64,000 bases of DNA from Glycera tridactyla (Eukaryota). This document shows positions 8,844 through 64,000 of the stretch, one piece after another. The stretch lies in assembly GCA_965644265.1 (NCBI GenBank), contig OZ286462.1:51212001-51276000 (forward strand). Reading direction: 5' to 3'. The notes beneath the pieces are model-generated. The model saw only the letters and a list, made by a program, of their open reading frames with translations. It was not told the DNA's origin and made no database searches. Position 1 is the first letter of the stretch; each line of letters starts with the position of its first letter. Both the position numbers and the translations under genes were made by a program.

Positions 8844-9878
8844 GCTCCAACTCAAAATATTTGCTTCAGGAAAAAATGGTCATTGTTATTTCCATGAACA
8901 ACAACACTGCAAACTTTACTGCAAGTTTTATTAGTATACATAGGCATTGCACTTATGCAGTAAAGAGTTCTAACACGAGACATCAGAGTACATGCGATGC
9001 TATTTGTAGTAGATATCACTATGGCACATATTTCAAGGATTTTGTCACCAGTGTTGTCCTCATTGTAGGAATTTATTTCTAACATTACGTTCTTATTGTA
9101 GAGTTTTGTGTGCAGATTTTTTGCCAGCTTTGAGTTTATTTTTAGAATGTGTATGCCGTGCTGTGTGTGTGTTGTGCAATGTTTGAGTAGTGTCTGCAGA
9201 GTGCATTCCTGGTGTGGTGTGGTGTGTCGTACATGTACATATTAGTAGAAACCTGCATGGGGACTCTTTAACATCAGGCGAGACCATGGATTCATATCAC
9301 TCTGTCTTACTTCGAGTCTCAATACATTTTACAATGCCATTCTCATGGCATTCTCAAGTCTCTCCATGCAAGTTTCACTCTATTGCTTACTCATTCATAT
9401 CTTCTAATAAGATGTTTTTTCAGCAGGACTAACATATGGTCATATTTTTGGTTTGCTTCAAGGATCATACACTAATCCTGTTTGGCTTCTGATTCGGAGG
9501 TCATTTATATGAGAAACTGGGCACATTATGTGCTATCTTAGTACAGCTCATATTCCTGTGTTATGAAAGAATCCTGGATATGCACAACAAATTCTGTCTT
9601 CACTTTGTACCATCCATATCTTTATTTCATAAATGATCCCTGCATATGAGCTACAGATATGGCCTCCCCTTAGTACAATGGGTACCTACTTGCAGCTTCC
9701 TGCAGTGATTTTGTACCAATTGCTCAAATGTGCATCGGGATGGGAATCATTGGTATGAATGAAATTGAAGATGCTAGCATTCATTCATTCATCACTCATC
9801 ATCGGCTCCTAGTTAAGGTTCACATCTCGTGTTGGCATCATGTTTCATTATATCCTCTGTAACGTGATTTATCCACAG

Positions 9879-11468: not shown

Positions 11469-11653
11469 NNNNNNNNNNNNNNNNNNNNNNNNNNNNNNNN
11501 NNNNNNNNNNNNNNNNNNNNNNNNNNNNNNNNNNNNNNNNNNNNNNNNNNNNNNNNNNNNNNNNNNNNNNNNNNNNNNNNNNNNNNNNNNNNNNNNNNNN
11601 NNNNNNNNNNNNNNNNNNNNNNNNNNNNNNNNNNNNNNNNNNNNNNNNNNNNN
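11469..11653. other. assembly gap (185 N)
   Basis: Run of N. Confidence 1.
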
Positions 11654-21780: not shown

Positions 21781-21847
21781 AATAATAATGGAAATTATAA
21801 TGATATTGATAATGATAATGATAATAATGATGATATTGATGATGATA

Positions 21848-21893
<46 letters not shown>

Positions 21894-24481: not shown

Positions 24482-25590
24482 ATTGCTTAGTCTTTTTTGT
24501 AATTTTATTTCGAGATCACTTCCGGTCAAAATGGCCACGCACCTGTCGAACGAAAAACCGTCAACAACCTTCAGAAAATCACGGAAAACACACTTATAGA
24601 GAGAAGGATCGACTTGTAACACGGTAATCGTTTCATTGAAATAGTATTCTTCACGATATGAGGAAGTTTGTCAAACGCGTTCGTCTGTCGATATATTTCG
24701 AGAGTGGGATCGAATTGTAAAGTTCAGCCCAGTTTTGTGTGAGCTATAATTTTTGTTGATCTGATATAATGTGCAAGTAATGTCCTTATGAGTGAATATT
24801 TCGAATGATTATGCATATGGACATATATATATATATATAGCAAAGAATGATCTCAATCCCATATACAGTTAAGTCTGCAAGGAAAGTCCAAGACTACATA
24901 TCACTCATGAAAATATGTGTCTCTCATATATCTGAAGATAGATCTGTCAAAAGATATTTTACTGCATTCAGGTCTTGACATCTGACAGTATTCATGGCTT
25001 TTAGTGAGATAAAATTCAATTTGGATGTATTTAGGAGTCTTGAAAGAGTGGTACTCGATGGTCCGATTGTAATGATGGCTTCATAAGTTGGGAGAAATAG
25101 TGTGGAAGATATACATTTTCTCAGGTAATCATTGGCTAAATGATTTTCAACCAAAATTATCGGGCATGGTATAAACTTTTCGAAAGGTTTTTGGGTGTAT
25201 TTAATCAGATGATTTTGAGCATAGTTTCAATTTCCCGAGCTATACATTGGAATGGGGAATCTGATGCATAGAAAGAGAGAATCTGATGCATAATAGAAGC
25301 TATTGGTCAGGAAGTGTGTACCCCTCCTCCCCTTCCCCAACCCCAGCCTCATTCCCCCACGCATGCATGCATGCAGGAATATCAGAGTGAAACATACACC
25401 ATTGCTATGAATTATGCAGAGAGAGCATGCAATCTCTCAATTTATTGCTAGTTTGATATGAATCAAGCTGTCAGGCTCGATGAAGGCCCAGCAGCTCAGA
25501 GTGTGGTTCAAGCTTCACATGTGCGCTGCACCTTATGCAATGGCTGATGCCTGCCGTGTTAACAATGCCTGGTGGTGCTGCTGTCCTCGT

Positions 25591-26094
25591 GGCCTCATAG
25601 TTGATACTGGTTGTGGCCTCATAGTTGATACTGGTAGTGGCCTCATAGTTGATACTGGTCATGGCCTCATAGTTGATACTGGTCTTGGCCTCATAGTTGA
25701 TACTGGTCGTGGCCTCATAGTTGATACTGGTTGTGGCCTCATAGTTGATACTGGTCGTGGCCTCATAGTTGATACTGGTCATGGCCTCATAGTTGATACT
25801 GGTCATGGCCTCATAATTGATACTGGTCATGGCTTCATAGTTGATACTGGTCATGGCCTCATAGTTGATACTAGTCTTGGCCTCATAGTTGATACTGGTC
25901 ATGGCCTCATAGTTGATACTGGTCATGGCCCCACAGGTGATACTGGTCATTGCCTCATAGTTGATACTGGTCATGGCCTCATAGTTGATACTGGTCATGG
26001 CCTCATAGTTGATACTGGTCATGGCCTCATAGTTGATACTGGTCATGGCCTCATAGTTGATACTGGTCATGGCCCCACAGGTGATGCTGGTCGG
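25591..26094. repeat. 24-bp minisatellite, about 21 units
   Basis: Unit GGCCTCATAGTTGATACTGGT plus a variable triplet (CAT, CGT, TGT, CTT, AGT). Two variant units GGCCCCACAGGTGAT.. (units 15 and 21). Confidence 0.97.
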
Positions 26095-27949
26095 CTGTGT
26101 AGAGGATAACTCGGTCATAACCCTTGCTTAGCAGCTATACTTGCTAGGATATATCAAAATTCACACTAAAGTATGTCAAGTTTGATTGTGTCGAATATAT
26201 TTTTCGCCCTAGCATCGCTTATTTGGATCAAATTGAAATGAGACTCACTGACAGAATATGTCTACATCTCTGGCAACTATAAATCTATTCTTCGTAAAGT
26301 TCATTTGTATATTTCACCATAGAATGCCAAATATGTTGATTTCATGCTGCTTTCACGGTGAGAGCAGTGGCCATAATTACATTGTTTCACATAGGAAAGA
26401 CCAGATGACAATGCCAGTGGATCCAGCATATAAATGCAATGAAATAATGGCGTATCCCGTTGAAAAGCATACAGAATACCCGAAACAAGTTTTGATAATC
26501 GTCAGGAGACCTGTACGATCCATTTCTGCCATTGAAAGTCAAATTAGACAAAAATTTACGAATTTAGCATCTCAAACGTACCTGCCACATTTGGATCTGA
26601 AAGAGTTTATCTATATAGCGAGCAAGACCTCATATCCAAGCGTACTTTTGGCTGATGGTTTCTAGAAAAAGCAAGGTGTTCCTTGATAGGTACAAATCAG
26701 CCAAATCTACTACCCACTGTGGGCACAAATTGTGTGATATATATTGGTTCAAAGAGGAAATGATGAGATTTTGTGCAAGGAAGATACAAAATTGATGGTG
26801 AATAATTCATAGTTGAAAGAAGCTCTCCTGTGGTCTTATACAAGTCTCATACCTACGAATGATAGCATACATGCCATAATAAATAGGCTATCAAGCACTG
26901 AGCAAAAGATATGCTATATAACAACAGAGATATGCTTGTTGAGAGACTTATGGTCAAAGCAGTGATTCTCATCAAAGATTCAATAGGTGTCACAATGCGA
27001 CTACATGTCTGACCACTTTTGCAAATGGGGTGAAGATTCTCACTCTATAGCTTGTATTGTGTTTGTCCACCGGAAAAGCCTCGATTTGAGGTAATTGTAA
27101 TGCGACGAATAAAAATGAAGAATCATCAATCAATTAATTCAAATTGAAGAATTATGTGATGTGATGCCTTGTTCTGATGAAGAGCTGAAGAATGTACCAA
27201 ATTGCTAGTCATATCTTGCAAATTGCAAGTCATATCTCAACACTTCCCTTGAGAGACATACATATGGGGATTTTAAGTAAGTTGCTCATCACAGGTCTCA
27301 CTGTATCATGAACAAGGACAGTGCTTTTGTATTATATAGACAGGCACTATGTTCTGTGGAACTATGCACCCTTTCTATGTTTTATTCTGCTGCAGTATGA
27401 GACACAGCTCTATATTCTCTATTGCAGTGTCATAGCAAAATAAACAATAAAGATGTGTGAATATTATGTATTTTGCATGGCAACAAGATAATGTAAAATA
27501 TTTGAATAGTTAACAGTTCGCACTTTAATTTTCAAATGATATATTACCGATGAGATGTAATCCGTGAAAAAGAACACATGCATTTGCTGAGTGTGATATT
27601 GCCATGATATTGATGGATTACAAATAAGTAAGATCGTAAAATAACAAATTGATGGGATATTGTTGCCATGGTGACATAGAAACATGATGGATATTTTGGT
27701 GTCCTATGTATAATTGCATTGCTTTGAATTAAAAAATCAGTGTATAGCCATCCATCACATAGTTTATGGGTACATTTTAATGTAGCTCACTAATCATTTT
27801 AAAAGATGAGCTCATTTATCTTGTCTTGTTGCTAAGTAACAATATGAATAGATAATGAATGGTAAAATCATATATGGCGCGCATGTGGATTCTACTTTTT
27901 ACAAGCTACAAAGAAGGATGTAACAGCTCAATGAAGACAGCTGGATATA

Positions 27950-32495: not shown

Positions 32496-32643
32496 NNNNN
32501 NNNNNNNNNNNNNNNNNNNNNNNNNNNNNNNNNNNNNNNNNNNNNNNNNNNNNNNNNNNNNNNNNNNNNNNNNNNNNNNNNNNNNNNNNNNNNNNNNNNN
32601 NNNNNNNNNNNNNNNNNNNNNNNNNNNNNNNNNNNNNNNNNNN
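32496..32643. other. assembly gap (148 N)
   Basis: Run of N. Confidence 1.
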
Positions 32644-45271: not shown

Positions 45272-45475
45272 TGAGAGAGAGAGAGAGAGATAGAGAGAGA
45301 GATAGAAAAGACAGACAGACTNNNNNNNNNNNNNNNNNNNNNNNNNNNNNNNNNNNNNNNNNNNNNNNNNNNNNNNNNNNNNNNNNNNNNNNNNNNNNNN
45401 NNNNNNNNNNNNNNNNNNNNNNNNNNNNNNNNNNNNNNNNNNNNNNNNNNNNNNNNNNNNNNNNNNNNNNNNNNN
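45272..45475. other. (GA)n/(GACA)n microsatellite running into assembly gap (N 45322-45475)
   Basis: Visible repeat followed by 154 N. Confidence 0.95.
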
Positions 45476-46605: not shown

Positions 46606-46883
46606 NNNNNNNNNNNNNNNNNNNNNNNNNNNNNNNNNNNNNNNNNNNNNNNNNNNNNNNNNNNNNNNNNNNNNNNNNNNNNNNNNNNNNNNNNNNNNNN
46701 NNNNNNNNNNNNNNNNNNNNNNNNNNNNNNNNNNNNNNNNNNNNNNNNNNNNNNNNNNNNNNNNNNNNNNNNNNNNNNNNNNNNNNNNNNNNNNNNNNNN
46801 NNNNNNNNNNNNNNNNNNNNNNNNNNNNNNNNNNNNNNNNNNNNNNNNNNNNNNNNNNNNNNNNNNNNNNNNNNNNNNNNNNN
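46606..46883. other. assembly gap (278 N)
   Basis: Run of N. Confidence 1.
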
Positions 46884-49270: not shown

Positions 49271-50846
49271 CATTTTCACCTCACTGTCATATAGTTTTGC
49301 TTTTATCACATGGATTAGAGATGAAATCATCAAAAAGAAGTTCTCATACAGCTGTGAAGTATTACATGCAATACTCAACACCTGATACTTCACCAAAAAT
49401 GGCACATCCATGTGAGCATCCCCCTTCAGGATCCCCAAACGGAAGACAAAAATCCATAAAATTCACCGACACAAAATAAAACAATTCTCTCAGGATATGT
49501 GGAGAGGAGCTGAGTTGTGAAATAGTTGGGGAAACTATTGTCATTATAATGAGCATGGTGAGAAGTGTGATGAATGGCCTGGAGGTGTGAATCTTGCATA
49601 GTAAATGGCGGGAGGTTGATGAGCATTCATCACATGGCTTATACCGCTGCTTCAGCCACATTCATCTCTCAAGTCACCCATCGAGGTCGGCTTCACTAAC
49701 ACTCAAATACATACATATTTGGCACAGGTTCTTCTAGTTGCCATGGATATAATAACAAACCATGGTACCCTTTCTAAGTGTGAGAACAATTTGAATATCC
49801 AGGTTCGTTAGATGTTGTAGAAGCAAGCATTTTTCCTGTCTGTTGGATGAAACGTGCATTAGTTACTTGGTCATCAGCTTCAGAATTATCTTCATTATCA
49901 AAAGAAAGGTTAGAAGTTGAGACAGACCTAATGTGGAAATGGTTTACTCTTTTTCTTTGAGCCTGCTTTTGTTTCCAATTATTCTTGAGTACAAGCAGTT
50001 TCAGTGCTTGTTCAGTCACTTGAATGCCGAGTTTTAAGTAGGTGATACAAAATTGGCCAAGTGACTGAGCATATTCTCATGTCAGGTAAACTTGTTAATG
50101 ATATCAAATGGTACACCACTACATTCACAATTTACATTTACATTCACAGATGCCCAGGAAATTGTTGTAACAGTCTGACCTGGATGGTCAGGTGATGTCT
50201 ATTCTAACAAAGCCTTCTAACCATGATTATAGTGTCTACTCTTTTCACCTGAGAAAAGTGTTCAGACATACTATTTTATATCTGTGATAAGTAAACAAAT
50301 ATCGTTGCCATATTCCAATGGTTGATTGGCAAGCATCTGTTCAAGCAGCAATGGATCAGGGTTTTTTTTGCTATCCCATAGACTGGTATTATGCAAGTTA
50401 ACTCATGTTAAGTTCTCTTGAATGTACTGTGAAACCAGCAATGAGAAACCCCTGGGAAGAGACCACCTCTGATGGGAGACTGCTATTCCAGAGCATGATT
50501 TCACATATGCCCTTTAGAGTGTGATGAGTATCATAAAGCAAGCAGAGTTCAAGCTGTCACTTCCAAAGCTAACTCATCAGTTTACCATATGCCTAGTAGG
50601 TTATTTATGCCATGACACAAGGTGTGGAGACATTTTGCTATTAGGTTATAATTAACATCTTTCATTGGCTGTTGTCAACGCAAGCTGCACCATTAGTTTG
50701 TCTTGTAACCCAGCAAGCTGTTCCATCAATTTAGCATTACCCCTGTCGCACATGGCTCTTCTATCAATCCATCAACGCCCATTATGGCTCAGAGGGCTCA
50801 GCATTGTTTGCCTTCCTTGCACTTTCGAATATTATCATTATGACTG

Positions 50847-51019
50847 CAGTAAAAGCTGCAATGAGAGACCACTTTAAATATCACCAGGACACATTCTTAA
50901 AAGGGGTGGTCTCTCAAAGGTATATTTGACTATGTCAAATAGGAATGCTACCCTGAATAAAGCAGCCTTTTATCTGAGGTGGTCTATCACCAGGGGGCCA
51001 CCTGTCACAAGTTTCAATG
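50847..51019. mobile_element. old, CpG-decayed copy of the GAGAGACC MITE (6299-6475)
   Basis: Colinear with 6299-6475 (GAGAGACC...GGTGGTCTCTCA..GGTATATT.GACTAT.TCAAATA...CCCTG...GAGGTGGTCT...CAGGGGG...GTCACA.GTTTCA.TG); termini eroded. Confidence 0.75.
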
Positions 51020-52159
51020 AGTGCATTTGCTAGCATAGATTCATGGTAATTGATTGAGTGGTGAACATGAATATGTTTTGAAGTTTGCCAATATAACAAC
51101 ATGATGAAATATATGTGTGTGTGACCAACGGAGAGCTAGAATCATTCAAATCCCATGAAGCACTGAAGAATACATGTACATTTAGATATTAGGTAAGGCT
51201 ATCACATCAGCCATCTCAGGTTTTCCAGCCTCAACTCTTTGGGTTGTTTCTCTCATATTGTGGTGAAATATATTTTGAACAGCAATTTTGTTGTTGGTTC
51301 TCATAGGGTCAGTAAGAATAATATTTGTGGATTCACTTAGAAGAATAATATCTCCATGATATACTGTAGACCAAAAGGCACCATAGCTTTGTTTGATATT
51401 GAATATGAATTTTTAAGTGATATGTATAGAAACATTTTAATTAAGTTGCTATTAACTGTGGACCATTTATCCAACAATTAAATCCAGAGTGGATTGACAT
51501 AGTGCATTCTATCATGCAATATCACAGAGAGAGTTGTGTGTGGTCCAAATGGAGCTATCAGTCAACGTGTGACTGGCGACTGATGAGGATTTAGAATTTC
51601 CGTGTTTATATGAATGGCTCACATGCAACATGACATATTAACCCCCACAACCGTTATCTCAACCATAATTCAAGTGAAGTCGCTCAGATACAGCATTTAA
51701 CTCTACAGTAACGACCATGGTGATGACAGTGATGATGAACATATAATAGAATAATGATGTTGAAAATGAGGAAAAATAATGATAACATATGACGCAATGC
51801 CCACTGATATTTGAGCCCTTTATGGTCAAACAAATCCTTGATTGTGTTGTTACAGTTATGTTGTAACAATATTCTTGTCCTATAGTAGGAGGACGTAATC
51901 ATGGCCTATTTCCTACTTATAGCAAAACGTTCTTATGGAGTAAGTGCTAGTGTCATAATGATGAATGTAATGATCATAGTCATATGAGCTCAATGATGAT
52001 GATGCTGAAAACATGATGATATGAACAATACTGATGCCAGCGGCAGCAGCAGTGACAACTAAAATGGTGGTATTCTAGTATGACACTAGTTTAGTATCTC
52101 ACTCCTAATCACTTGTGTATTGTTCAATGAGATGCAATGAGGGAATAGCGTTACTGATA

Positions 52160-52319
52160 CAGTCGAACCTGTCTATAAAGACCGCCTTCGGTCGCATCAA
52201 AAAGCGGTCTTTATGGGCAGGTGGTCTTTATAGAGAGGTCATTTACTGTTGAAAATACTACCACGGTCGCAGCTCAGGTGGTCTTTATAGAGAGGTGGTC
52301 TTTAGAGCAGGTTCGACTG
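52160..52319. mobile_element. MITE, AAAGACCACC subfamily (young copy)
   Basis: TA flanks. Termini CAGTCGAACCTGTCTATAAAGACC and GGTCTTTAGAGCAGGTTCGACTG. CpGs retained; nearly colinear with 31346-31506. Confidence 0.94.
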
Positions 52320-53379
52320 TATTTTATATTAGTGGTAGTTTGTCCATCCAGGTGTAGGGTCTGCATAAGAGTCTACGAATTCAGAGAAATTCAGCATTTG
52401 CGCATGTATATATAGGTGAGTATCAAAGCCTGATGTCAAGATGGTTGCCATTCATCCCAGGAATATTCAATGCTTTGCCATCTATTCGATGTGAAATCCT
52501 ACCAGGGATATGTGCACGTTTTGTCATCACAGAAGCCAGTCTCTGATTGCACATCCAATCTTCATCTGATACAGGTTCAAGAGGCTGCTGATAGATGGCA
52601 GTATTATTCTGAGAAAGCATGGCTGATGCCTGCAGTCAAGAGTGATCTATCAACATATTGAAATTCTGAAAATCTCGTTCTCCGATGTGTCGATGATTGT
52701 GGAATTAGTCATGAAAAATGTGAATTCTGATTCAATCTCAAGATCATACAACTGAAACTCTTTTAAATGAACATTTACAAGTTATAGAAACATAAGGATG
52801 CTTCAGAGAATAGGTGGATTGGGAATAGAAAATTTGAGAGTTCAAATATTCATCTTAGCAAAATTGAATCATTGAGTGTTTCGGGTATTCCATGCAATTT
52901 ATACATAGAGTTTTTAGTCTCAGTTTAAGGGGGGGGGGGGGGGGGGCTAGGAACGGAGGTATGTGGCATTTAATGCCCTCAAAGTGGACTACTATGAATC
53001 AGCTTTCTGCCTTGTATATATTTTGTATGAGTAACTTCAGTTTGTCTGGCAGGGGCATTCATCGAGTCTGTAAATGTAGCGATTTTTCAGCACCATCCTT
53101 GAGTTGACTTTATTACCATCATTACTGAAGGTCAGTGAACGATAATTCTTGAAATGAGCTGATTGCAAGTTTCACTTTTTAATTTAGTACTTCATCCACA
53201 TGGGCTGGAGCAGGAAGCAGTTTTTGTATAAAGGGGTTAATTTTGAAATAGTGATGGATTACACATAAAAATGTCTTTGTTGTTTCCACTCTAAACATCT
53301 GAATGAATACCACGTAAAATATCAAGACACTGGCATGATTAGGACAGTCGGTTACATTGTGATATAACGAAATCGCGAA

Positions 53380-54140
53380 ATGTCGGCGCCGACAAAGTTG
53401 CATCAGGTTAGGATTGGCACAGTTTATCAGAAACTTAAACAAGTGAATTTGCATGTCTTTCTGTATGCAAGTCTTCTTATGCTGACTTATCTCAAAAAGG
53501 AGCAGAGCTTCCGGTGGTACAGCTTTGAGCTCCGTGAAAATCCCTCGACGATTGCAACAATACAATATTACGTCTGTTAGCATCTTAGTCGGCGAGCTTC
53601 ATTACTTTTCCTGTTCCGTGACTTCTTTTGGTTACGTAATACTAGTTGGAATTCTGAGCTCATTACAACTTACCAGGGAGTCGGCTTTGGAATATTACTT
53701 TAGTCACGCTATCATCTGAATCATGAGATCATTCCGAGCTTTTCGGAGTAAAAATTTGTTCAGACTTCGCAACTATAATTCCATCTCTAGCTCATCGCTA
53801 CCTTTACCTGCCATCAACTAATTATGCAGTATGTTTTCAATAATTAGTTTTCACACCTTGAAGACACTCAGAATCCGTTACAATTAAAATAATGATGGCA
53901 CAACCATGAGAATTGCCATCAGTATCGTTATATCTATTTTCGAGCGAACAACATGCAGACTCCATATTTCCAGCCACCTTTCCTACCGAAATTTTTAGAG
54001 AATTGGCCGATGTATTTGGGGTGTTCATGCAAATATATTCATTGCTGGTTGCTGTAGAATTATCAGTCATCCGAAGATTCAGTGGACACACTCTGGTGCC
54101 AAAGTTGGTCAAAACTGAAATCCCGAGGACTGATCTTTGA
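53380..54140 (+). pseudogene. possible decayed intronless rhodopsin-type GPCR
   Basis: Fragments across frameshifts appear in 7TM order: VRIGTVYQKLKQVNLHVFLYASLL (TM1-TM2-like), FSCSVTSFGYVILVGILSSLQLTRESALEYYFS (TM3 with ALERY-like end), IMRSFRAFGVKIC (TM4 start) and TMRIAISIVISIF (TM6-like). By-eye resemblance only. Confidence 0.3.
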
Positions 54141-55353
54141 AATACTGTAATGGGGCGATGCATGACGTTGGTTGGGACTCCATGGATACAGTTGGTCTTT
54201 TCACATAGCATGGATTTTTATTGGGCTGTGATGAGAGACTTCCTGACGAGAGACCACTCCAAAGTGAGACTGCTTTCTCATGGCAGTTTTTCTTATCACA
54301 GGTCCAACTATATTCAGTTATTCAAAGATGAATTAGGACCTTACATGATATTGACAACAGCCTAAGAAACTGTCAACATTCACAAGTAATTCCCATTTCT
54401 CAGTCAAGTTGTGAAGAAAGCTATGCTTGGCAGAGAATGTAACAAAATTTGACTGACTTGATGGTTGTACATTGACCTCCAATGAGAATGAACAACTGTA
54501 TTTCTTGAAACTTGATCCTGTTCTCTCTTTTCTTGCAACTCACTCATCCATGAATGTCGACAGGTTCATAAAGCAAGAGGTGAATATCCCTGGTCAACTG
54601 GCTTTCACTCATTCAGAAGTGTAGCAATGGTTTCATAATAAAGCACCCGGTGAGAAATATGAGCTGAAGAAAAATGGGAATATTTCTTCAGATCACTTCT
54701 GCTCCCCATAACAATCAGCCTGTTTTCATGCATATTTGAAAAGAACTGTCTGGCACATTATAGCTTCTTGAGCATGCTGATTTTTGTTACATTTTCCTGA
54801 ACCACAGACACACTTGTTAGATCTACATTTATGGTCATCACATGAGGAAATCAGAAACATGTGAAACCCTAGGGGAAATAAGTTTTCATTGTTATTAGTG
54901 ATGTTTGGGCAGCATATCCTGTTCAGTTGGATTGATTTGACTATGATGTTTTTTATTGTCACCATTATCCAACATTCATCAGATTTGAATGCAAAGTTTA
55001 TGTGAATATATATTCAATACATACCTGAGAAATAATTCAAAAAGGACACTTCAATTTGCTGAGAATAGTTGGGGTATAATCAAGCATTCTCCCATTAATG
55101 TATTCATTGACGCAAATAGACATAGGCAGTGGTTTGGTGGTTCATGCCCAACTTTAGGTGGGCCACTGACATGAAAAGAATACTGGCCGAATCTGACCAA
55201 CAAATTCTATTCATATTTGACATGAGACTATTTGGGAGGGCCGTCCATAAGGTGGGCTGGACCACAAACCTGCCAGATTTGGTGGTTCACTCAGGCCACC
55301 AAGCTGCCGAATCCCATTTGGAGCTCTGTACATAGCATTGATGGCAGAAATCT

Positions 55354-55519
55354 NNNNNNNNNNNNNNNNNNNNNNNNNNNNNNNNNNNNNNNNNNNNNNN
55401 NNNNNNNNNNNNNNNNNNNNNNNNNNNNNNNNNNNNNNNNNNNNNNNNNNNNNNNNNNNNNNNNNNNNNNNNNNNNNNNNNNNNNNNNNNNNNNNNNNNN
55501 NNNNNNNNNNNNNNNNNNN
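55354..55519. other. assembly gap (166 N)
   Basis: Run of N. Confidence 1.
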
Positions 55520-56257
55520 GGGCTTGAGGGGAGGGAGGATTTTGACAGTAACAAATGCAGTTTGGGGTATCATCTCCGCCATCGCAACCATCCATCATGG
55601 GGTTGTCATTCGAGTAACCAGCGGGCTCTGTTCTACCACTGAGCGATCTCTCGTAAGTTCGGGATTCACTATGCAAATGCAGGGCAAACCCAGAAGTTAT
55701 GGAGGATTGATGGTAGATGCGTATTAATCAAATGGGCCCTGGACACATCCAGTCAAGCCTTGTGGGTTTCGAAATGTCTGCTTCTCTCCAAACTGACAGG
55801 ATTGTTATTGAATGTCCCTTTCATCACTGCATTTGCCAAAATTGCAAGCCATATGTGTGAAGTAAAACCAGCACAATGTTGACTGCGAATCTGACATTCA
55901 AATGTTGAAAATACATAGAAATATACGTCACCGAAAACTGAATATGTCATTGTCAAAGATGAATGTTCTGTTGGGCAAAAATACCAAGATATCATTTAGT
56001 TGCCATTTTTCACCTTTTCTATTATCTTGATATATGGTTCGAAGGGATGTTAATTGAAAATAAACCATATGTTTGATATTGAAATGGATATCATGGTAGT
56101 CATGGGTGAAAATATCTGCCCATTTCGGTGATGGACACAATTTATTCACTCTTCATTATTCAAGGTTTTACGCTTGAATTTACAATGAATGGTACACACC
56201 CCACACATGCACACACAAACACAAGTGCGCATGTCAAATAGGGAAAAGCCTATATAG

Positions 56258-56318
56258 AGTGGTCTCCCATTAGAGGGTGGTCTCGCAAAACAGGGGTCTC
56301 CCAAGGCAGGTTTTACTG
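56258..56318. mobile_element. right-half MITE fragment (GGTCTC-type)
   Basis: Three GGTCTC units ending CAGGTTTTACTG-TA; no left end seen. Confidence 0.6.
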
Positions 56319-56792
56319 TATTCCATCAAGAATTCAACGGAGGAAAATCCAATATGGCTGACTTTAGGATGTGATTTTCTGCTGACCAGGCCCTCACAAG
56401 TGGAGATGACCCATGTCAGTCATCACTCAAATTCATGCAAGTCAGGGCCATAACTGAGTGCCAAGGTGATCAACACTGGTGACTGTGTAACATGTGAAAT
56501 GTAAATAAATTGACGGAATCCTGACAGGAAGTTGGCATTTTAGAGAGATTCATCCAGGTTACAGCGGCATACCTCAGTCATAGTTCACTAACAACACTGT
56601 GTTTGTTGGTTCAACTTAAAGTCTGATTCTTGGTTCAACACATCCTCTATTGTCATCTTTACATAGTGTATATGATAGTAGTCTTCACCCTTTGACACTG
56701 ACGTTCATTCTTGCTTCCCTTGCAGCTTCACATATTTCTGTCTTGTCAGTTCCAAAAATCCATGATTGATAGATTTTCTTTAAGCATCTGTT

Positions 56793-56813
56793 AAATCAAA
56801 TCAAACTTTATTT
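56793..56813 (-). mobile_element. L2/CR1-type 3' tail remnant
   Basis: Minus strand AAATAAAGTTTGATTTGATTT, i.e. AATAAA followed by a (TTTGA)n tail as seen in L2-group LINEs and SINEs. Confidence 0.45.
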
Positions 56814-56839
56814 ATACTCATAAAAATATTTTTTATTCA

Positions 56840-57318
56840 ATACGAAAGCCGTATACAAAAGCCGTATACAAGCGTTGGAGGAGAAAGTGGCTGAACAAGA
56901 TGCTATTATTCGAGAGTTGAAAACCCCGGAACAGATGCGATCAGCTGATCCACCCCAAAACATGGCAACACCTGAACAAACTGACAGTAAAGAAAACAAT
57001 TTGGTTTTCCGCGGCATCGCTGAAGGGTTAAACGATACACGAGTCATTACACGACTAGTCAATGAAGAACTTGATATACTAATGGCTCCATCTCAGATCG
57101 TTGCTACGACAAGAATGGGAAGAAACAACCCGGAAAATTGCAGGCCTTTGTTAGTGAAACTGGCCAGCAAGAATCTGCGAGACACCATTTATAACGAACG
57201 GATTGTGCTTCGACCAAAACTACCCTACGTTTTCATTCAAGAAGATCTTACACGTGAACAAGCTAGACTGGCCTACGCAGCTAGATTGAGGATGCGAAAA
57301 CGTATGATATATCAGCGA
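56840..57318 (+). mobile_element. non-LTR retrotransposon ORF1p fragment (coiled coil-RRM-CTD, L1/CR1/L2 'Transposase_22'-like), within ORF 56875-57393
   Basis: KENNLVFRGIAE, TRMGR, RPLLVKL and VFIQEDLTREQARL match the R.NNLIF.GIPE...RIG....RPILVKF...IFI.EDLT motifs of this ORF1 class. CpG-rich. Flanked by TTTTATTCA at 56831-56839 and 57319-57327. No ORF2 follows. Confidence 0.8.
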
Positions 57319-59241
57319 TTTTATTCAGGTCAGACACCATTGTCAGAAAATGGCAGAGTTTTAGCCAGACAATGCAGACATGTTTTGAAGTAGGTCAGAA
57401 AGGCTGCTGCGAGCAGTGGTATTCTTCCACCAGGCAGGCTGCTGATGCTGAAGGCTGGTAGGCTGGCCACATATTTTCAGTATCTAAGAATAACCATGAA
57501 TCCAGGCCAGCTTGCATAAGCTCGTTCTGCCTTGGTGTCGGCAGCCATCTTGGTTGCCATTATGTATGCTGGTGCAGGGCACGGAAGTGACCTGGTTTCA
57601 CTATTGACATCAGAGAATGTGACCTGGTTTCACAATCGACACCAGGGCAAGACTTATAAGGCCCTGGTTGCTAAGGAAGATGTGGTTACTAAGGGAAATC
57701 AGGTCACACTGTGTCAAAACCGGGTCACATAGGCCTCATTTCTAGGAATGAGCCTTTGCAGCTCCTTAGAAGGCTGGGCAAGCACTCGAGGTGAAGCATT
57801 CCATTCTATCTCAAGGATATATAACTGTGAGGGAAGGAATGAGAAGCAGAGATCTTCTGGGAGCCTACGAGGACGGTCGCTGCCGAGATAGGACGAACTT
57901 CAGCTTCTCAGTCCTTCCCACTGCATTCTTGTACCTGTTGGAAGAGGGAAGGAATAAAGGACTTCATTTAACCTGGACAACATCGTTGGTCATTCATGTT
58001 GGTGAGCCTGGGTGAACAAAAGTGAGCCTAGGTGAGCCAGCTCCAGCCTATGAAGAGTCGATCCTGTGAGCAATCCCCCGCTCTTATGTGTCTGAGATGT
58101 GTCTACTAGGTGCTACTAGGAGATCATAAGTACATTTACTAGCCCGGGTATCAACTGTCTGGGTGACTGCTCTACAATCCTTGCTCGTCATGAACACGCC
58201 TGTAAACCATCTTTGACATATGTGGTCGAGAACGAAGGTCTTTTCGAGCTGGTATTCGACTATGACTGTGCGATGTCCGTCTGCATGTGAGTCTGTGCAT
58301 TTCGACAAATTGGCGACGATTTTTCGCTGATTCACGGGAAGGCTGGGAAGCTGTGGCAGTCGATTAACCGCCAACGTGATTGAGAAATCGACGAGGACGT
58401 CATCTTGCGCTTGTGGGGAGCGCAGCAAAACCGTTGGGTCATCAGAAGGAGGGACGTTTTCGGCGAGAAAAAAAGATAGTCCATGGTGAATTCCGTACTG
58501 CCAGCGCGTGAAAAGTCATCAGGGAAGTGAAACCGTGTGAAGTAAGCGGCATCTACCGGCGAAAAAGTCATCTTTATTACCGGAGAGAGTGGTCTGGCCA
58601 AGCCCACGCAAGCTCATCAGGGGAATAGAGACCGTGAGGTGTAGCAAGTGAAACTGGTGGAGTAACAGTTGGCCTGCCAAACGAAGTGGACTTTGTACAG
58701 CCGAGGAATCAGACATGGATTGCATGGCTACTAACGTGAGTTGAAGAGTTTTTCTCGTAAAATTGCATTTTCGTACACGTCCCTACCACCTGATCTTCCT
58801 ATTTAGTCGGGATATATTCAGAAAAAGGATATTTATTTACTTGTGAGATGTGGTTGGATGTTTGATTGGCACCCAGACAATCCACATCCACCTTCATCTA
58901 ACAGTCTATATACTGAAATCGCCTATTCAATAGATTTTCACTCATTTGAAAGTTGCTAAGGCAAATTTCAGGTGGAATAAAGTCATTGAGAAGGGCAACA
59001 GTGCAAACTTTACCTAGTAGGGCCAAACACCTATTGTCAGTGGACAAAACACTGCAAATTGTCTAAAGAAGGGGAGAAATTCTGTTCATTTTTCGTGAAA
59101 GAGACTGTAAGAGGGAACTGTTAGCATACTAAACAGATTACTAACAGGTGTTTGTATCTGTAACTCCACCACCAACTGGCCAAGTTATCAGTGTGCAGCC
59201 TGGATAGATAGTAGCCCATAAAACATCTTCCCACTACCACC

Positions 59242-60312
59242 ATGTCATATCAGCAGCAGGCTGGTGGGCCTGGCCCAGATACACTTGCTGATGCACTTGG
59301 TAAATGTGACTTTGATAAAGGTGGTCCTGCTATGCAGGTACCCATGTTTGAACCAGGAAAAAGTGATGCTTTTGCTTGGTGGACTAAATTTGAGAACTAT
59401 TGTGATTATAGAAAAATGAAACCTGAAGTGGTTATGCCAATGGTACTTGGTGATTCAGCCATGATTTGGTGGGATTTTGTTGCTGAAAAAGATAAAAATC
59501 TAAAGCAAAAATTCCTCGCTGAATTTGGAGGCTTAGGAATTAAGCCATATGCTAAAATCAGTGAGTGGGAAAACCTCACTCAAGGGAATGAATCAACTGA
59601 CCAATTCATAAGGAAAGTGGTTGGTATGGGCAAAAGAGTATATGACAGGGCTACAATGGATGATTTCCATCCATCTGAAGAGAGCCAGATAATGACTAGA
59701 GTCATTAAAGGTGTCAGAGAGGGTGTGAGACGCATGATTCTCATGAGAGGTCCCACCAATCTCATGCAGCTGATGGAAGCTGCAAAAGACTCTAAGATGA
59801 TGGAAGGGTATGAAGAAGGTGTAATAGCAACCATCAATGCTAGAATGAATCGGCTGGATGCCAGACTTGATGGCAAAGTAGCTGCACCTGTCTTCCATCC
59901 TAAATCAACTCTTATTCACATAGGAGAGCCGGTCATGATGGCACAAAGCTCTGAGGATGATGATGATCACCATCATTATGATAATGATAATGATGATCAT
60001 GACGATAATGATGATGAGAGTAATGATGGTTATGATTGTAATGATGATGATGAGGAATCATATGTGATGGTTGGTATGATGAACCATATGTCACAAGTTA
60101 CCTGCTGGGATTGTGGCCTGGTGGGCCATTATTCTCCTCATTGTCCATTCAAAAACAGAGCTGTAGCAGGTCAAGTTGGTGGGTTGGCTAACACATTTTC
60201 GAATCAGAACCCCTTGGTAACAAACCAGACTGTTGCAGTTGTGTGTGTGTGGTGTGGAATTAATGGACATGCTCTGGCGGATTGCCCAAAACGTATATCT
60301 GCCAGAGAGTAA
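59242..60312 (+). CDS. Ty3/Gypsy-type Gag-like protein, 356 aa (capsid-like domain, acidic tract, two CCHC zinc knuckles), stand-alone
   Basis: LGDSAMIWWD (L.G.A..WW) and LTQGNESTDQFIRKV (MHR-like Q...ES...F...) are retrotransposon capsid motifs. CWDCGLVGHYSPHC and CVWCGINGHALADC are exact CX2CX4HX4C knuckles. Start context ACCACCATGT; no internal stops. Confidence 0.88.
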   Translation: MSYQQQAGGPGPDTLADALGKCDFDKGGPAMQVPMFEPGKSDAFAWWTKFENYCDYRKMKPEVVMPMVLGDSAMIWWDFVAEKDKNLKQKFLAEFGGLGIKPYAKISEWENLTQGNESTDQFIRKVVGMGKRVYDRATMDDFHPSEESQIMTRVIKGVREGVRRMILMRGPTNLMQLMEAAKDSKMMEGYEEGVIATINARMNRLDARLDGKVAAPVFHPKSTLIHIGEPVMMAQSSEDDDDHHHYDNDNDDHDDNDDESNDGYDCNDDDEESYVMVGMMNHMSQVTCWDCGLVGHYSPHCPFKNRAVAGQVGGLANTFSNQNPLVTNQTVAVVCVWCGINGHALADCPKRISARE

Positions 60313-60889
60313 CTTGTTCTGTGATCAACTCAGAGGTGTGAATGAACTGTGCCGAAAAATCACCTCACTGAGTCTTTTCAAGGTAATTGATGTAACACAG
60401 AACTCACTGCTAAACCTGCATTGAAATGAAAATGATATTAATATTTTACCGGTGCATGGTGATCATAATCATGATGATGATAATGATGATGACAATGTGG
60501 CCATACTCAAACTGTGCTGGTAACTTCTATCATGTAAAACAATCAGAGAAATCCTGTGAAAGTGCTGGTAAATTCACCAGTGCCTGTGTACACAATATAT
60601 ATCCCATGACTGAGTGTGTATAGCCTTGAGAGATTTTATTCTATCAAATATGTCAAGTTAAGGACATTGCTGACTGCATACTGGCAGTTAGCTGTGTGGT
60701 GGCAGGAAACTTACCTGTATTTCTTGTGCCCCGGCTCGACTATCTGCGATGGATGTAGCCATAAATCTCGAGCCAGGGACCGTTTCACTCGAGGTTGTAC
60801 CACTCACTGCTTCATTCATAGTTTGTGTACACAGAATCACATGATAGATGTCATGATATGAGCCTGTAACTATTTCACCAAGTACCTAC

Positions 60890-61490
60890 ATGTTTGTGAA
60901 ACTAGCAAATTCCATGAAAGAGGCGAATACTGAACCGCCCATCATGAAATTGGAACATATCATGTCAATCTGTAGATATCAAATAGTAGACTTGTCTGAC
61001 AGGAGGAAGGAGCTCTCAATGCTGCTCCCTCTCATTAAAAAGACAAATAAACTGATATTACAGTATCTACTCACCATTTTGATAAAGAAACTTTGCCATG
61101 ATAATATGCTAGGATTAGAATGTAGAGGAGAAGGTGTGTATGAACAGGAAGACCAGGGCGCATGATGGTCTAGCAAGATCATTATGCCAACCTACATAGG
61201 CTATTGATTGATCTATTAGAAGTTAATCATAGTATATTTGCGATATCTGCAGAAGCAGTTACACCAGGAGATGATGTTCGACATGAAATCGTACTTGATT
61301 TGAGAAGTAAGTTGTAAGAAGTCAGCCATATGGATTGAGTTTGAAATGAAACATGCATCAGGTGAAATAAAAATGATTGAAAATTGCTCTGAGGTGAATC
61401 ATAATGATTCTCCAGATGATGATATTGTCATGTTTGTGTTGACTCTAAGGCAGGGAGATGCTTGGGTCAAAGTCCATCAGCCAGCTACAT
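60890..61490 (+). pseudogene. possible decayed APE-type LINE endonuclease
   Basis: ANSM...KLEHIMSICRYQIVDLSD...RGEGV (ORF 60890-61165) and later SAIWIEF...QGD (61322-61490) loosely echo NARS..K..EL....DII.ISETW...RGGGV...LWVEI...GDFN. Weak. Confidence 0.25.
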
Positions 61491-62022
61491 AATGTTGATA
61501 AAAGACGAAAGTGGTCAAGTTGCTTACTCAAGGAGCATCTTGACAATCATCTCAGCTCAGCTGATAGGATGACAATATATCTATGAAATAGTCACAAACC
61601 AGAGAGCATTGCAGATGTTGAGTGAGTGAATAGTTTCCATTTTGGCCATGATGAGGGTACTTGTTAGTAAGTTTTAAGAATGGGTTCGGAATCTGCCAGT
61701 CGTGAAATTAAATTTAAGCAATTTGACTTCAGACATCTGGGTATTCACCTGTGAATAGGCTACAGGGGTGTATACTGAGTTGGAATAATTATCGCTGCTG
61801 AAGGGTCAGAATGATATCAGGCACATATCCCCAACTACAGAATGATTGCAGATCCGCCCAGGATAAATAAGTGAACCCATGTCTTGAAAACTAACGAGAA
61901 TGTTTGCATCCTGACTATTTCTATACAGAATTCGCTCAACTGGGCCAGTCATTGATGGCTGAGAGTGCTTTGTGGGAAATGAGAAAAATAAGTAGCGTAT
62001 TCTGTTTTTGTAAAATCACCTG

Positions 62023-63670
62023 GTGGCGTGATTTTTGTGTATTTGAAATAATTCCACAAGTTTCCCACTTAGCTTGAAACCCTGAAAATCCTGATAAGCG
62101 CTTCAACATGTGAGGTGGGTTAGAATGAGAGCAGGTTGTATTTTTAGCATCAAAGTACAATATAGGCTCCCTCCATGTTCTTCTGTCTTGGATCATGGCA
62201 GATCAGGTGACGGCTGATTCGAGGTCTGTGTAGAGATATAACGGAAGCCAAGATTTCAATCAAAGTGAATGTTTGTTCTCCAGAGGCTGGACTATGGTGG
62301 TATAGTCTCAAACTTTATATATGTGAAAGAACTGTAGCCAACAGGTTTGACGATAGCTGTCTGAGTTTATTTAATTTTATATTTTCTTTTATGTTAGCAT
62401 TGGTCCACCATGGGGATCACCAGGCCCTGCCATCTTAGGTCTTTAAACAAAGATATTTTTGTAAAAAGATGTGACTGTTCTTACCCTGTGAGGGTATAAT
62501 GAGGTGTTATTGTTATACTATTGATGTTTCTAGTGATCTTGAGCAGATTGGACAGACAGATATGATGAATGTTCTCTCCTGAGAAGTAATATGTTGGAAA
62601 GAATTGAGAGAGAGAACAATGGAGCCGAATTCCAGAATAAAATGGTATTCTTAAATCATGTGATGCAAAACATCAGGTTTGGCCAGTGCAAGCGCCATCT
62701 ATATCCTCGATTTGTCCACATAATAATAGATTATTCGCGGAAATGGCTCAATTTAGTCATTACCTTCAGGGCACACTCTGTAGAATGGCGAAAAAAAATA
62801 AAAACTGCAGAGGGTTGTGAAACAGTGGTAGTGTGATGGAGAGCTTGACTCCCGCCACAATCACTCTCGCTACGACCAACAACGCCAGTTTATTCGCTAT
62901 GTTTTCCAGGTATATACAGGTTTATGTCAAATTGACGCCTGATGTGAATATGATAGAGAAGAGTGAATTTTTAATGAATGTTTTGCTACTGTGTTTGAGG
63001 CTGAGACAGCTAGTGGAAATTTCTATGACTATGGAAGTTTGTGAAGATCATTGCAATGTCTGGTAGTGCAAGAGAGCCTAATCTTGCACAGGTTGTTCTA
63101 TAATATATCTATGAACCAAGGTTTAAGCTTATATATTAATGTGGTTCTTGAAGTTTAAGCTCCACCACCCTCATCATTGTTACCTAAGGCTCCAGAGAAT
63201 CCCATTGATGCAGCCAGTGTGGTGGCGTGATTTGATCTAGCTAAAAGTCCCTGTGGATCACCTAAGTTGGGATGTCTTGTTTGTGTATTCTCCCTAGGTG
63301 CCTAGGTGGGTGCAAGGTTAAGGGTACCCTATCATTCTGTTCAGTCAACAATAATAGACGAAATATGCAATGCTGTGCAATGACTGATGTCAGAACCAGA
63401 AGCCAGCCGACCTTTGCTTCTGATTCTGACCATCAACCCTCATTTCTGCATTCAAAATTCATGCTGTTTATGTGTGTTGGGCGTGATATTTTGAGTATAG
63501 TCTCTGTGTGATGTCAGAGTCAAATTGAGAAATAAGTTAAACGGGATCTTTGGTGGGACTACCACCACTGATCGTGGCCAAAATGTTCTCAGAAATGAGA
63601 GGTCACAAGTCTGTGGCTATATTCTCAATCTCTATAAATGTATCGCGATTGTGGCGTGATTGTGCGTGAT
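62023..63670. promoter_or_regulatory. cluster of SREBP-consensus sites (ATCACGCCAC on the minus strand)
   Basis: Exact GTGGCGTGAT at 62023-62032, 63222-63231 and 63651-63660, with variants at 63478-63487 and 63662-63670. The reverse complement fits the RTCACSCCAY SRE consensus. Confidence 0.35.
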
Positions 63671-63877
63671 CAGATTATACATGTGAAACCCCATATTTAA
63701 TCGCATGATACTCGCATTTATCGCATGGTAAGGTTGCTGTGTGTGTATAATCATGTATATATATATATATGAATCGTAAGCAGTTTTGGAGGGAAATATT
63801 TTGTGATTGATTGATATGTTGATACTTCATGATATCGATCGGTTATTAACTGGTATGTTCGTTTGCTTGAGTTTCAG

Positions 63878-64000
63878 AGACATGGCGCCAGGAGTGACCC
63901 TTGTGGGATGCCTCATATCTTCCATTTCTCTGAGCTCGGCAGATGGGCATATCAGTGGACCAGCATGGAGTATGCGACCGCTACCAATCAAGTCCTGCCA
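63878..64000 (+). CDS. candidate exon truncated by the window edge
   Basis: Acceptor TGTTCGTTTGCTTGAGTTTCAG at 63877. ATG at 63882 in good context (GACATGG) gives MAPGVTLVGCLISSISLSSADGHISG..., a signal-peptide-like start. The phase-0 frame RHGARSDPCGMPHIFHFSELGRWAYQW... is also open to the edge. Confidence 0.35.

What the first reader, a model, noticed from the sequence alone, without database searches (positions are those of the whole stretch)
59242..60312. Stand-alone, apparently old but intact Gag: candidate domesticated capsid gene (Arc/PNMA/PEG10-like) in an invertebrate
Seen: (i) 356 uninterrupted codons with capsid motifs and two perfect CCHC knuckles. (ii) Only 8 CpGs in 1071 bp and about 23 Met, consistent with long exposure to CpG-to-TpG decay, yet no stop arose, whereas neighbouring old TE relics are riddled with stops. 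(iii) An in-frame (GAT/AAT)n expansion (about 59953-60057) makes a D/H/N-rich linker without breaking frame. (iv) Start context ACCACCATG. (v) No protease, RT or integrase ORF, LTR pair or PBS that I could find nearby. Established: Ty3/Gypsy Gags have been repeatedly domesticated (Arc in tetrapods and flies, PNMA, PEG10/RTL), and some form RNA-carrying capsids. Inference: purifying selection on a host-co-opted Gag that may still assemble particles and bind RNA. An inserted acidic/His-rich spacer before the nucleocapsid would be an unusual feature.
Basis: partly seen in the sequence, partly recalled or inferred. Interest (0 to 1): 0.8.

Follow-up and report, generated by a model that had tools for sequence, protein, structure and literature searches.

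The report
Intact gag beside its decayed pol
This is the still-open capsid (gag) gene of an old Ty3/gypsy retrotransposon whose polymerase gene lies in ruins right beside it, so gag was probably kept by selection, but whether the host uses it cannot be decided from this window.

Summary
The ORF is real: 59242-60312 (+), 356 codons, two exact CCHC knuckles, 8 CpGs, 23 Met and an in-frame GAT/AAT repeat.

It is a Ty3/gypsy Gag. Its only relatives (24-37% identity) are gag ORFs that sit directly upstream of PR-RT-RH-IN pol genes. The predicted fold is a two-lobed capsid like dArc, PNMA2, Arc and Ty3.

It is not truly stand-alone. Colinear remnants of protease, reverse transcriptase and integrase follow the gag stop (60627-61782). 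They carry 8 stops in 185 aligned codons, several frame changes and about 2.3-2.6 kb of deletion. No LTR pair was found in the window.

Gag keeps family-invariant residues as well as intact elements do (67%), whereas the pol remnants keep 40%. An open gag by chance is therefore unlikely, and purifying selection after pol was lost is the best reading.

I could not tell whether that selection acts on a host-co-opted single-copy gene or on a gag-only non-autonomous family. The source genome is not in the searchable collections.

The nucleocapsid part has lost its basic character: the linker has net charge -22 and the knuckles have no Lys or Arg.

Verdict: a new member of a known kind, of moderate interest.

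The parts
59242..60312 (+). Intact gag ORF, 356 aa, TAA stop
   Evidence: HMMER hits to gag ORFs of complete Ty3/gypsy elements. Pfam Retrotrans_gag matches below threshold (20.8 bits against a cut-off of 24.1).
59329..59886 (+). Capsid core, residues about 30-215: two helical lobes followed by a long helix (residues 174-213)
   Evidence: AlphaFold2 with a 36-sequence alignment gives block-mean pLDDT of 84-97 here. Foldseek against PDB finds Arc CTD, the PNMA2 capsid, the dArc1/dArc2 capsids (target TM 0.64-0.67), Ty3 and MLV CA.
59950..60060 (+). Asp/Asn/His-rich disordered linker encoded by an imperfect (GAT/AAT)n repeat
   Evidence: TRF period 3 at 59952-60053 and period 33 at 59957-60058. 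Repeat family D1. pLDDT below 50. The 60 residues before knuckle 1 have net charge -22 with 0 Lys/Arg, against -3 to +14 in 22 relatives.
60103..60144 (+). CCHC zinc knuckle 1 (residues 288-301), with no Lys or Arg inside it
   Evidence: Weak zf-CCHC and HIV nucleocapsid hits.
60244..60285 (+). CCHC zinc knuckle 2 (residues 335-348), with no Lys or Arg inside it
60627..60779 (+). Protease-region remnant of pol: weak, 3 stops in 51 aligned codons, in a different frame from gag
   Evidence: tblastn and tblastx HSP at 60663-60749 to L002 and L003 pol. It lies 351 nt after the gag stop, against 367 nt in L003. Aligned.
61162..61510 (+). Remnant of the start of reverse transcriptase: the pre-RT motif and the first RT motifs, spread over three frames
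   Evidence: HSP at 61186-61296 (41% identity to L003 pol residues 373-409), followed by short colinear pieces at 61311-61340, 61364-61465 and 61435-61509. Shuffle control.
61534..61782 (+). Remnant of the end of the integrase core: 4 stops in 83 aligned codons. About 2.3 kb of RT, RNase H and integrase is missing before it
   Evidence: HSPs at 61555-61719 and 61639-61749 to the pol of L002, L003 and L004.
58850..59241 (+). CpG-poor 5' flank of gag (observed/expected 0.12) with the ACCACCATG start context. Probably an untranslated leader of the old element or of the present transcript
   Evidence: The in-frame stop lies 9 codons upstream of the ATG.

Best explanation
This is an old Ty3/gypsy (Metaviridae) insertion. 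Its pol has been destroyed: large deletions, and stops and frame changes in what is left. No LTR pair is detectable in the window. Its gag is still open and still looks like a working family member.

Most likely gag has been held open by purifying selection at this locus after pol was lost. That makes it a candidate co-opted Gag, arising independently of Arc, PNMA and RTL.

The protein has five parts:
- a short N-terminal arm;
- a two-lobed capsid domain;
- a long helix;
- a linker of about 37 residues, acidic and His-rich, encoded by a microsatellite;
- two CCHC knuckles stripped of basic residues.

Inferred mechanism: it self-associates through the capsid domain. It either forms capsid-like assemblies or co-assembles with, and interferes with, the Gag of related active elements. 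Its nucleic-acid binding is poor.

Shown here: identity, fold, the pol remnants, the contrast in conservation, and the charge anomaly.
Inferred only: selection at this locus, assembly, and function.
For: 1. Relatives are gag ORFs that lie 3-24 nt upstream of in-frame PR-RT-RH-IN pol genes.
2. The capsid fold is predicted with high confidence and matches the dArc1/2, PNMA2, Arc, Ty3 and MLV capsids.
3. Pol remnants follow gag colinearly. BLAST's own sum statistics chain them to the gag hits. None of 300 dinucleotide shuffles reaches the best score, and none gives more than one hit against a chain of 3 in the real sequence.
4. The remnants have 8 stops in 185 aligned codons and at least 2-3 frame changes within about 300 bp. 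At that stop rate, 356 gag codons would carry about 15 stops, so the chance of none is about 2e-7 (my arithmetic).
5. Gag keeps 28 of 42 positions that are invariant in four relatives (67%). Intact members score 65-81% when each is left out in turn. The pol remnants keep 23 of 58 (40%).
6. Gag and the pol remnant are both CpG-poor (0.18 and 0.32), which fits one insertion of one age.
7. No LTR pair was found between 50001-59241 and 60313-64000, and there is no second gag copy in the window.
Against: - Copy number, orthologues, dN/dS and expression are all untested.
- Only 3.7 kb of sequence lies downstream. The relatives' contigs also show no LTR pair within several kb, so a 3' LTR could lie beyond the window.
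- The stop-rate estimate rests on short, weak alignments.
- The relatives were chosen for similarity to this Gag, which flatters its conservation score.
- A scan of many windows will pick out rare chance survivors.
- The NC part looks relaxed, with its basic residues lost. That could mean incipient decay rather than a new function.
Confidence: 0.5

Rival explanations
1. Gag-only non-autonomous LTR retrotransposon, like the TR-GAG elements of plants. Selection acts on the family: gag is needed in cis, pol is borrowed from autonomous relatives, and the pol-derived spacer decays freely within the lineage. This copy would be a fairly recent insertion. A variant of this idea is that gene conversion from a younger copy refreshed only the gag part.
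For: - Gag is the only ORF, next to a decayed, deleted pol.
- CpG-poor elements that are still intact exist in this lineage: L002 has gag at 0.30 and pol at 0.34.
- A 3' LTR beyond 64000 cannot be excluded, because the relatives' contigs show no LTR pair within several kb either.
- TR-GAG elements are an established class (PMC13570524, PMC8704663).
Against: - No LTR pair was found with a sensitive word-7 blastn or with the repeat finder.
- There is no other copy or fragment of this gag in the 64 kb window.
- No protein above 37% identity exists among 1.84 billion representatives. This is weak evidence, because the source genome is not in the collection.
- An NC with few basic residues and a polyacidic linker is poorly suited to packaging the element's own RNA.
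Confidence: 0.25
2. Chance survivor. This is an ordinary dead Ty3/gypsy relic whose gag happens not to have been hit by a stop or frameshift yet. It has no function.
For: - The first stage scanned many windows and reports outliers.
- The NC region shows signs of relaxed constraint.
- A coding microsatellite has expanded inside the ORF.
Against: - Using the decay seen in the adjacent pol remnants, the expectation is about 15 stops, plus several frameshifts, in 356 codons.
- Conservation of the capsid core equals that of intact relatives.
- The fold is predicted with pLDDT above 90 for 147 residues.
Confidence: 0.12
3. Arc-like RNA-carrying capsid. The protein assembles particles that package and transfer RNA through its zinc knuckles.
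For: - The two-lobed capsid fold is closest to the dArc, PNMA2 and Arc structures.
- The Zn-ligand pattern is intact in both knuckles.
Against: - The linker before the knuckles has net charge -22 with no Lys or Arg, against -3 to +14 in 22 relatives.
- The knuckles themselves have no basic residue.
- The NC region has net +2.9 per 100 aa, where most relatives have 7-25.
- There is no sequence homology to Arc, PNMA or PEG10.
Confidence: 0.1

Closest known systems
Gag of Ty3/gypsy (Metaviridae) LTR retrotransposons. The nearest are unnamed elements on contigs JARPNV010001859.1 and JARPNV010003289.1 (GCA_029979705.1) and on two ENA metagenome scaffolds. The reference structure is the Ty3 capsid (PMC6525542).
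   Same: - CA plus CCHC knuckle architecture.
- Conserved capsid-core motifs.
- Gag ends where pol begins, and the PR, RT, IN order follows downstream.
   Different: - Only 24-37% identity to any of them.
- It lacks the 100-340 residue N-terminal extension that the closest relatives have.
- The basic linker is replaced by an acidic, His-rich one.
- Pol is destroyed and no LTRs were found.
- The stop is TAA, not the in-frame TGA read-through layout of the four relatives.
Co-opted Ty3/gypsy gag genes: Arc and dArc1/2, PNMA, SIRH/RTL including PEG10, and Drosophila Gagr (PMC11011659, PMC8321522, PMC7231272).
   Same: - An intact capsid-coding ORF left after loss of pol and the LTRs.
- The best structural matches are the Arc, dArc and PNMA2 capsids.
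   Different: - No sequence-level homology to any of them, so it would be an independent event.
- Recognisable pol debris is still attached.
- Fixation, orthology, selection and expression are all untested.
TR-GAG non-autonomous LTR retrotransposons (described in plants; PMC13570524, PMC8704663).
   Same: An element-derived unit whose only ORF is gag.
   Different: TR-GAG elements are defined by flanking LTRs and multiple copies. No LTR pair or second copy was seen here.
Gag-derived restriction factors: mouse Fv1, sheep enJS56A1 and yeast Ty1 p22/p18 (the last in PMC12530519; the others from general knowledge).
   Same: A capsid-competent Gag fragment that could co-assemble with, and poison, related elements. 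The loss of RNA-binding character fits such a role.
   Different: This is purely an analogy. No inhibition has been tested and there is no homology.

Membership tests
Ty3/gypsy (Metaviridae) Gag | Sequence homology to gag ORFs located directly upstream of a PR-RT-RH-IN pol | tested here: met
   Capsid-domain hits: P0002 at E 5e-32, P0003 at 1e-21 and P0007 at 4e-13. Their contigs carry pol with protease, RVT_1, RNase H and rve domains directly after gag.
Ty3/gypsy (Metaviridae) Gag | Two-lobed, all-helical retroviral-type capsid fold | tested here: met
   pLDDT is 84-97 over residues 30-215. Foldseek finds dArc2 6taq at target TM 0.67, dArc1 6tap at 0.64, PNMA2 8rb3 at 0.55, and also Ty3 6r24.
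Ty3/gypsy (Metaviridae) Gag | Curated Pfam model (Retrotrans_gag or Ty3_capsid) matched at the gathering score | tested here: inconclusive
   Retrotrans_gag scores 20.8 bits against a cut-off of 24.1 (E 4.7e-4). There is no Ty3_capsid hit. Most of the close relatives scanned are also below threshold.
Ty3/gypsy (Metaviridae) Gag | CCHC zinc knuckle(s) C-terminal to the capsid domain | tested here: met
   Two exact CX2CX4HX4C motifs.
Complete LTR retrotransposon | Intact pol, a flanking LTR pair, and PBS/PPT | tested here: not met
   Pol survives only as a degenerate remnant. No LTR pair was found. PBS and PPT were not tested, because no host tRNA set is available and there are no tRNA genes in the window.
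Co-opted (domesticated) gag gene | Intact gag ORF with pol and the LTRs lost | tested here: met
Co-opted (domesticated) gag gene | Single copy at a syntenic locus in related species, with dN/dS below 1 | not testable with these tools
   The source genome and its relatives are absent from the collections: exact look-ups fail, a metagenome scan is empty, and the best database identity is 37%.
Co-opted (domesticated) gag gene | Expressed as a host transcript | not testable with these tools
   No transcript data are available. The CpG-rich patch at 58300-58600 and the splice-like signals are only suggestive.
Arc / PNMA / PEG10-RTL families specifically | Sequence homology to those families | tested here: not met
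   phmmer against all PDB sequences, which include Arc, dArc, PNMA2, PEG10 and MOAP1, gives only generic zinc-knuckle hits. The similarity is at the fold level only.
TR-GAG-like non-autonomous LTR element | LTR pair around a gag-only internal region, in multiple copies | tested here: inconclusive
   No LTR pair and no second copy within the window. Only 3.7 kb downstream is visible, and the genome-wide copy number is unknown.

The most novel reading that the evidence does not exclude
This is an independently co-opted invertebrate Ty3/gypsy Gag. A microsatellite expansion replaced the basic RNA-binding linker with a polyacidic, His-rich tract, and the zinc knuckles were neutralised. The result would be a capsid-forming protein that no longer packages RNA. 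It might act as a dominant-negative restriction factor against related elements, or as a metal-binding or otherwise repurposed shell protein.
Probability: 0.25. Interest if true: 0.6.

Novelty: new member of a known kind. Interest (0 to 1): 0.42.

Why it matters
If selection at this locus is confirmed, this would be a gag co-option caught at an intermediate stage. The wreck of its own pol is still attached, and the nucleocapsid module is visibly being remodelled.

Documented gag co-options are few: 14 deep events across 2,011 eukaryotes (PMC8321522), and the phenomenon is little studied in invertebrates (PMC7231272). A case that shows which parts of Gag are kept (the capsid core) and which are let go or rebuilt (the basic linker and NC) would be useful for understanding how capsid genes are tamed.

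If it instead belongs to a gag-only non-autonomous family, it would extend the TR-GAG type, which the papers found here describe in plants, to animals. That would be of interest mainly to transposon specialists.

Tried and rejected
Searches that gave nothing:
- The word-index protein search with the whole Gag, and the profile version, which was swamped by zinc-knuckle candidates.
- Exact look-ups of Gag, two alternative-start versions and eight other window ORFs. None is in the collection, so absence of close relatives says little about copy number.
- A JGI metagenome scan.
- Pfam on ten downstream and eight upstream ORF pieces gave only weak, sub-threshold chance-level hits and nothing TE-related.
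- Rfam and tRNA scans of the window.
- LTR searches by repeat finder and by word-7 blastn, and LTR searches in the relatives' contigs.
- A paper search for the relatives' assembly accession.

Ideas tested and dropped:
- The upstream 172-aa ORF at 56875-57393 is not homologous to the upstream ORFs of the relatives. My impression that it resembles a LINE ORF1 found no support in Pfam or PDB.
- Met enrichment from ACG to ATG decay is not shown. At the 23 Met positions the relatives mostly have Leu, Phe, Ile, Lys or other residues, and Thr is the commonest residue at only one.
- dN/dS against the nearest relative was not attempted, because at 24-37% protein identity synonymous sites are saturated.

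Handling notes:
- No contig handled here was taken to be human.
- No N run was filled.

Full report
**1. The observation**

The ORF at 59242-60312 (+) translates without interruption to 356 residues.
- The frame is open for 365 codons stop to stop. The only longer open frame in the window is a transposase.
- With a stop density of 5.6% per codon over all six frames, such a frame has a chance of about 8e-10 at any given place.
- Codon position 1 is G-rich (0.39) and position 3 is T-rich (0.40), as in coding sequence.
- There are two exact CX2CX4HX4C knuckles, at residues 288-301 and 335-348.
- There are 8 CpGs (observed/expected 0.18, against 0.43 for the window) and 23 Met.
- Tandem Repeats Finder reports a period-3 array at 59952-60053 and a period-33 array at 59957-60058. 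This array encodes the Asp/Asn/His-rich stretch.
- The start context is ACCACCATG.

**2. What it is**

Curated models barely see it. Pfam Retrotrans_gag scores 20.8 bits, below the 24.1 cut-off, and the zinc-knuckle models are also below threshold. PDB sequences give only generic nucleocapsid-knuckle hits.

The word-index search found nothing.

A full HMMER pass over 1.84 billion representatives found only 70 proteins at E up to 1e-3.
- About half of them match the capsid part.
- The best is 37% identical: P0002 at E 5e-32. P0003, P0004, P0005, P0007 and P0008 follow.

The contigs of four of these relatives show what the family is.
- In each, the gag ORF is followed after 3-24 nt by a pol of 1262-1355 aa. 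L001's pol is cut off by the contig end.
- The pol domains are protease, RVT_1, RNase H and integrase, in the Ty3/gypsy order. For L001 only the protease part is on the contig.
- In all four, gag ends in TGA and pol continues in the same frame without another stop. This is a read-through layout.

AlphaFold2 with a 36-sequence alignment gives pLDDT of 84-97 over residues 30-215.
- The model has two helical lobes and a long helix at 174-213.
- The acidic stretch is disordered (pLDDT about 40).
- The two knuckles are moderately confident.

Foldseek against the PDB returns Arc CTD, the PNMA2 capsid, the dArc1 and dArc2 capsids (target TM 0.64-0.67 over about 170 columns), MOAP1, PEG10 CTD, MLV CA and the Ty3 capsid.

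It is therefore a genuine Metaviridae-type Gag, made of CA plus NC.

**3. It is not stand-alone**

tblastn of the relatives' pol proteins against the window gives weak hits. All lie on the + strand, just downstream of gag, in the order of pol.

| Region | Window coordinates | Notes |
|---|---|---|
| Protease region | 60663-60749 | Weakest of the three |
| Motif just before RT | 61186-61296 | 41% identity to L003 pol residues 373-409 |
| First RT motifs | 61311-61340, 61364-61465, 61435-61509 | Three short colinear pieces in three different frames |
| End of the integrase core | 61555-61749 | Hit by the pol of L002, L003 and L004 |

- tblastx chains these hits to the gag hits under a single sum-statistics E-value, 3e-16 for L002 and 5e-29 for L003.
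- The protease hit lies 351 nt after the gag stop, against 367 nt in L003. The gag-pol junction is therefore still in place.
- The integrase hit lies 1324 nt after the stop, against 3643 nt in L003. About 2.3 kb is missing between the RT and integrase pieces, and a further 250 nt or so is missing earlier.
- In 300 dinucleotide shuffles of 60313-64000, none reached the best real score, and none gave more than one hit of at least 24 bits. The real sequence gives a colinear chain of three.

No ORF piece downstream matches any Pfam family.

No LTR pair exists between 50001-59241 and 60313-64000. This absence has limited weight for two reasons. Only 3.7 kb downstream is visible. The relatives' contigs, including L004 with 4.4 kb upstream of gag and 2.1 kb downstream of pol, show no LTR pair either.

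**4. Gag against pol: the key contrast**

In the three aligned pol pieces (185 codons):
- There are 8 in-frame stops.
- The window keeps 23 of 58 positions that are identical in all three intact relatives, or 40%.
- The RT start changes frame at least two to three times within about 300 bp.

In gag:
- There are no stops or frameshifts in 1071 bp.
- It keeps 28 of 42 positions invariant in the four relatives' Gags, or 67%. Intact members score 65-81% when each is left out in turn.
- In the 36-sequence alignment it keeps 30 of 43 majority-conserved core positions, ranking 11th of 36.

If gag had decayed like the adjacent pol, about 15 stops would be expected, so the chance of none is about 2e-7 (my arithmetic). 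Even a four-fold lower rate gives about 0.02.

Both parts are CpG-poor, at 0.18 and 0.32, as expected for one insertion of one age.

Caveats:
- The pol alignments are short and weak.
- The relatives were selected for similarity to this Gag.
- A scan that reports outliers will find rare chance survivors.

I conclude that purifying selection on gag after pol was lost is the best reading, but it is not proven.

**5. Which kind of selection**

Two models fit.
- (a) Selection at this locus, meaning host co-option.
- (b) Selection within a gag-only non-autonomous family of the TR-GAG type (PMC13570524, PMC8704663), with this copy inserted recently.

Model (b) predicts near-identical LTRs and other copies. 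None is visible in the window, but the genome-wide count is out of reach.
- The exact sequences of Gag and of ten other window ORFs are not in the 15-billion-protein collection.
- The metagenome scan was empty.
- Even the window's young-looking transposase has no hit above 55% identity.

The lack of any Gag relative above 37% identity therefore says little about the source genome.

- CpG decay makes stops only from CGA.
- L002 has intact gag and pol with CpG observed/expected of 0.30-0.34, so CpG-poor elements that are still intact exist in this lineage.

I put (a) at about 0.5, (b) at about 0.25 and pure chance at about 0.12.

**6. How it would work**

The capsid core looks functional.

The nucleocapsid side does not look like a packaging module.
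- The 60 residues before the first knuckle have net charge -22 with no Lys or Arg, against -3 to +14 in 22 relatives.
- Neither knuckle contains a basic residue, whereas most relatives' knuckles contain one or more.
- From knuckle 1 to the C-terminus the net charge is +2.9 per 100 aa, against 7-25 in most relatives.

From established knowledge of retroviral NC, basic residues flanking and within the knuckles drive RNA binding and chaperoning. I therefore infer weak nucleic-acid binding.

The most likely activity is capsid-mediated self-assembly or co-assembly. That means either an empty or otherwise loaded shell, or interference with related elements in the manner of Fv1, enJS56A1 or Ty1 p22 (analogy only).

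Arc-like RNA carriage is possible but is disfavoured by the charge data.

**7. Comparison with the known, and novelty**

By sequence, fold and context it is a member of the Ty3/gypsy Gag superfamily, in a sparsely sampled lineage.

It is not a member of the Arc, PNMA or RTL families, because there is no sequence homology. It resembles them in kind. Co-opted metaviral capsid genes are well documented in mammals (PMC11011659), in flies (Gagr, PMC7231272) and across eukaryotes (14 deep events, PMC8321522).

Three features are unusual here:
- the pol wreck is still attached;
- there is no long N-terminal extension;
- an acidic, His-rich linker replaces the basic one.

Verdict: a new member of a known kind, and only a candidate until copy number, orthology and expression are checked.

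**8. Organism**

The organism was not identified.
- GC is 38.7% and CpG observed/expected is 0.43.
- The named relatives of the window's ISXO2-type transposase are all invertebrates: an octocoral, spiders, insects and an abalone.

'Invertebrate' is therefore plausible but unproven.

Nothing handled here was taken to be human. N runs were left untouched.

Noticed in passing
window 22838-24016 (+): An intact 392-aa ORF carries an ISXO2/IS1595-type DDE transposase domain (Pfam E 2e-22). It sits in the least CpG-depleted 4-kb block of the window (observed/expected 0.77), so it is probably a young DNA transposon. The best database identity is only 55%, and the named hits are all invertebrates.
   Followed up: partly
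window 58300-58600, with 58735 and 59139-59199: A CpG-rich patch (25 CpGs in 300 bp, observed/expected 1.34, GC 0.51) lies 650-950 bp upstream of the gag ATG. It is followed by a GTGAGT near 58735, then a TACTAAC and CAG sites near 59139-59199. This could be a promoter plus a leader intron for gag, or simply a younger insertion and chance motifs.
   Followed up: partly
window 60455-60500; also 51716-51771 and 21788-21855: A second GAT/AAT-type microsatellite lies 145 bp after the gag stop. In another frame it reads as a His/Asp/Asn run like the gag linker. Similar arrays occur elsewhere in the window, so the motif seems common in this genome. No similarity extends beyond the repeat.
   Followed up: partly
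window 56875-57393 (+): A 172-aa ORF with a TTG start lies in a block that is not CpG-depleted (observed/expected about 0.9-1.2). It has no Pfam or PDB match and is not homologous to the ORFs upstream of gag in the relatives. Its identity is unknown. It may be part of a younger element inserted upstream of the gag relic.
   Followed up: partly
window 25590-26092: A 24-bp minisatellite (21 copies, 94% matches) creates long spurious ORFs on both strands, at 25471-26118 (-) and 25480-26109 (+).
   Followed up: yes
L001-L004 (the relatives' contigs): All four related elements separate gag and pol by a single in-frame TGA, a read-through layout. Their Gags carry N-terminal extensions of 100-340 residues. 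L002 and L004 share a further homologous ORF several kb upstream of gag (E 6e-12). No LTR pair is seen within contigs of 8-12 kb. These elements may be unusually large.
   Followed up: partly
window 7931-8843, 11469-11653, 32496-32643, 45322-45475, 46606-46883, 55354-55519: There are six N runs (1844 N in all). ORFs listed across them, such as 7784-9082, are artefacts. They were left untouched.
   Followed up: no
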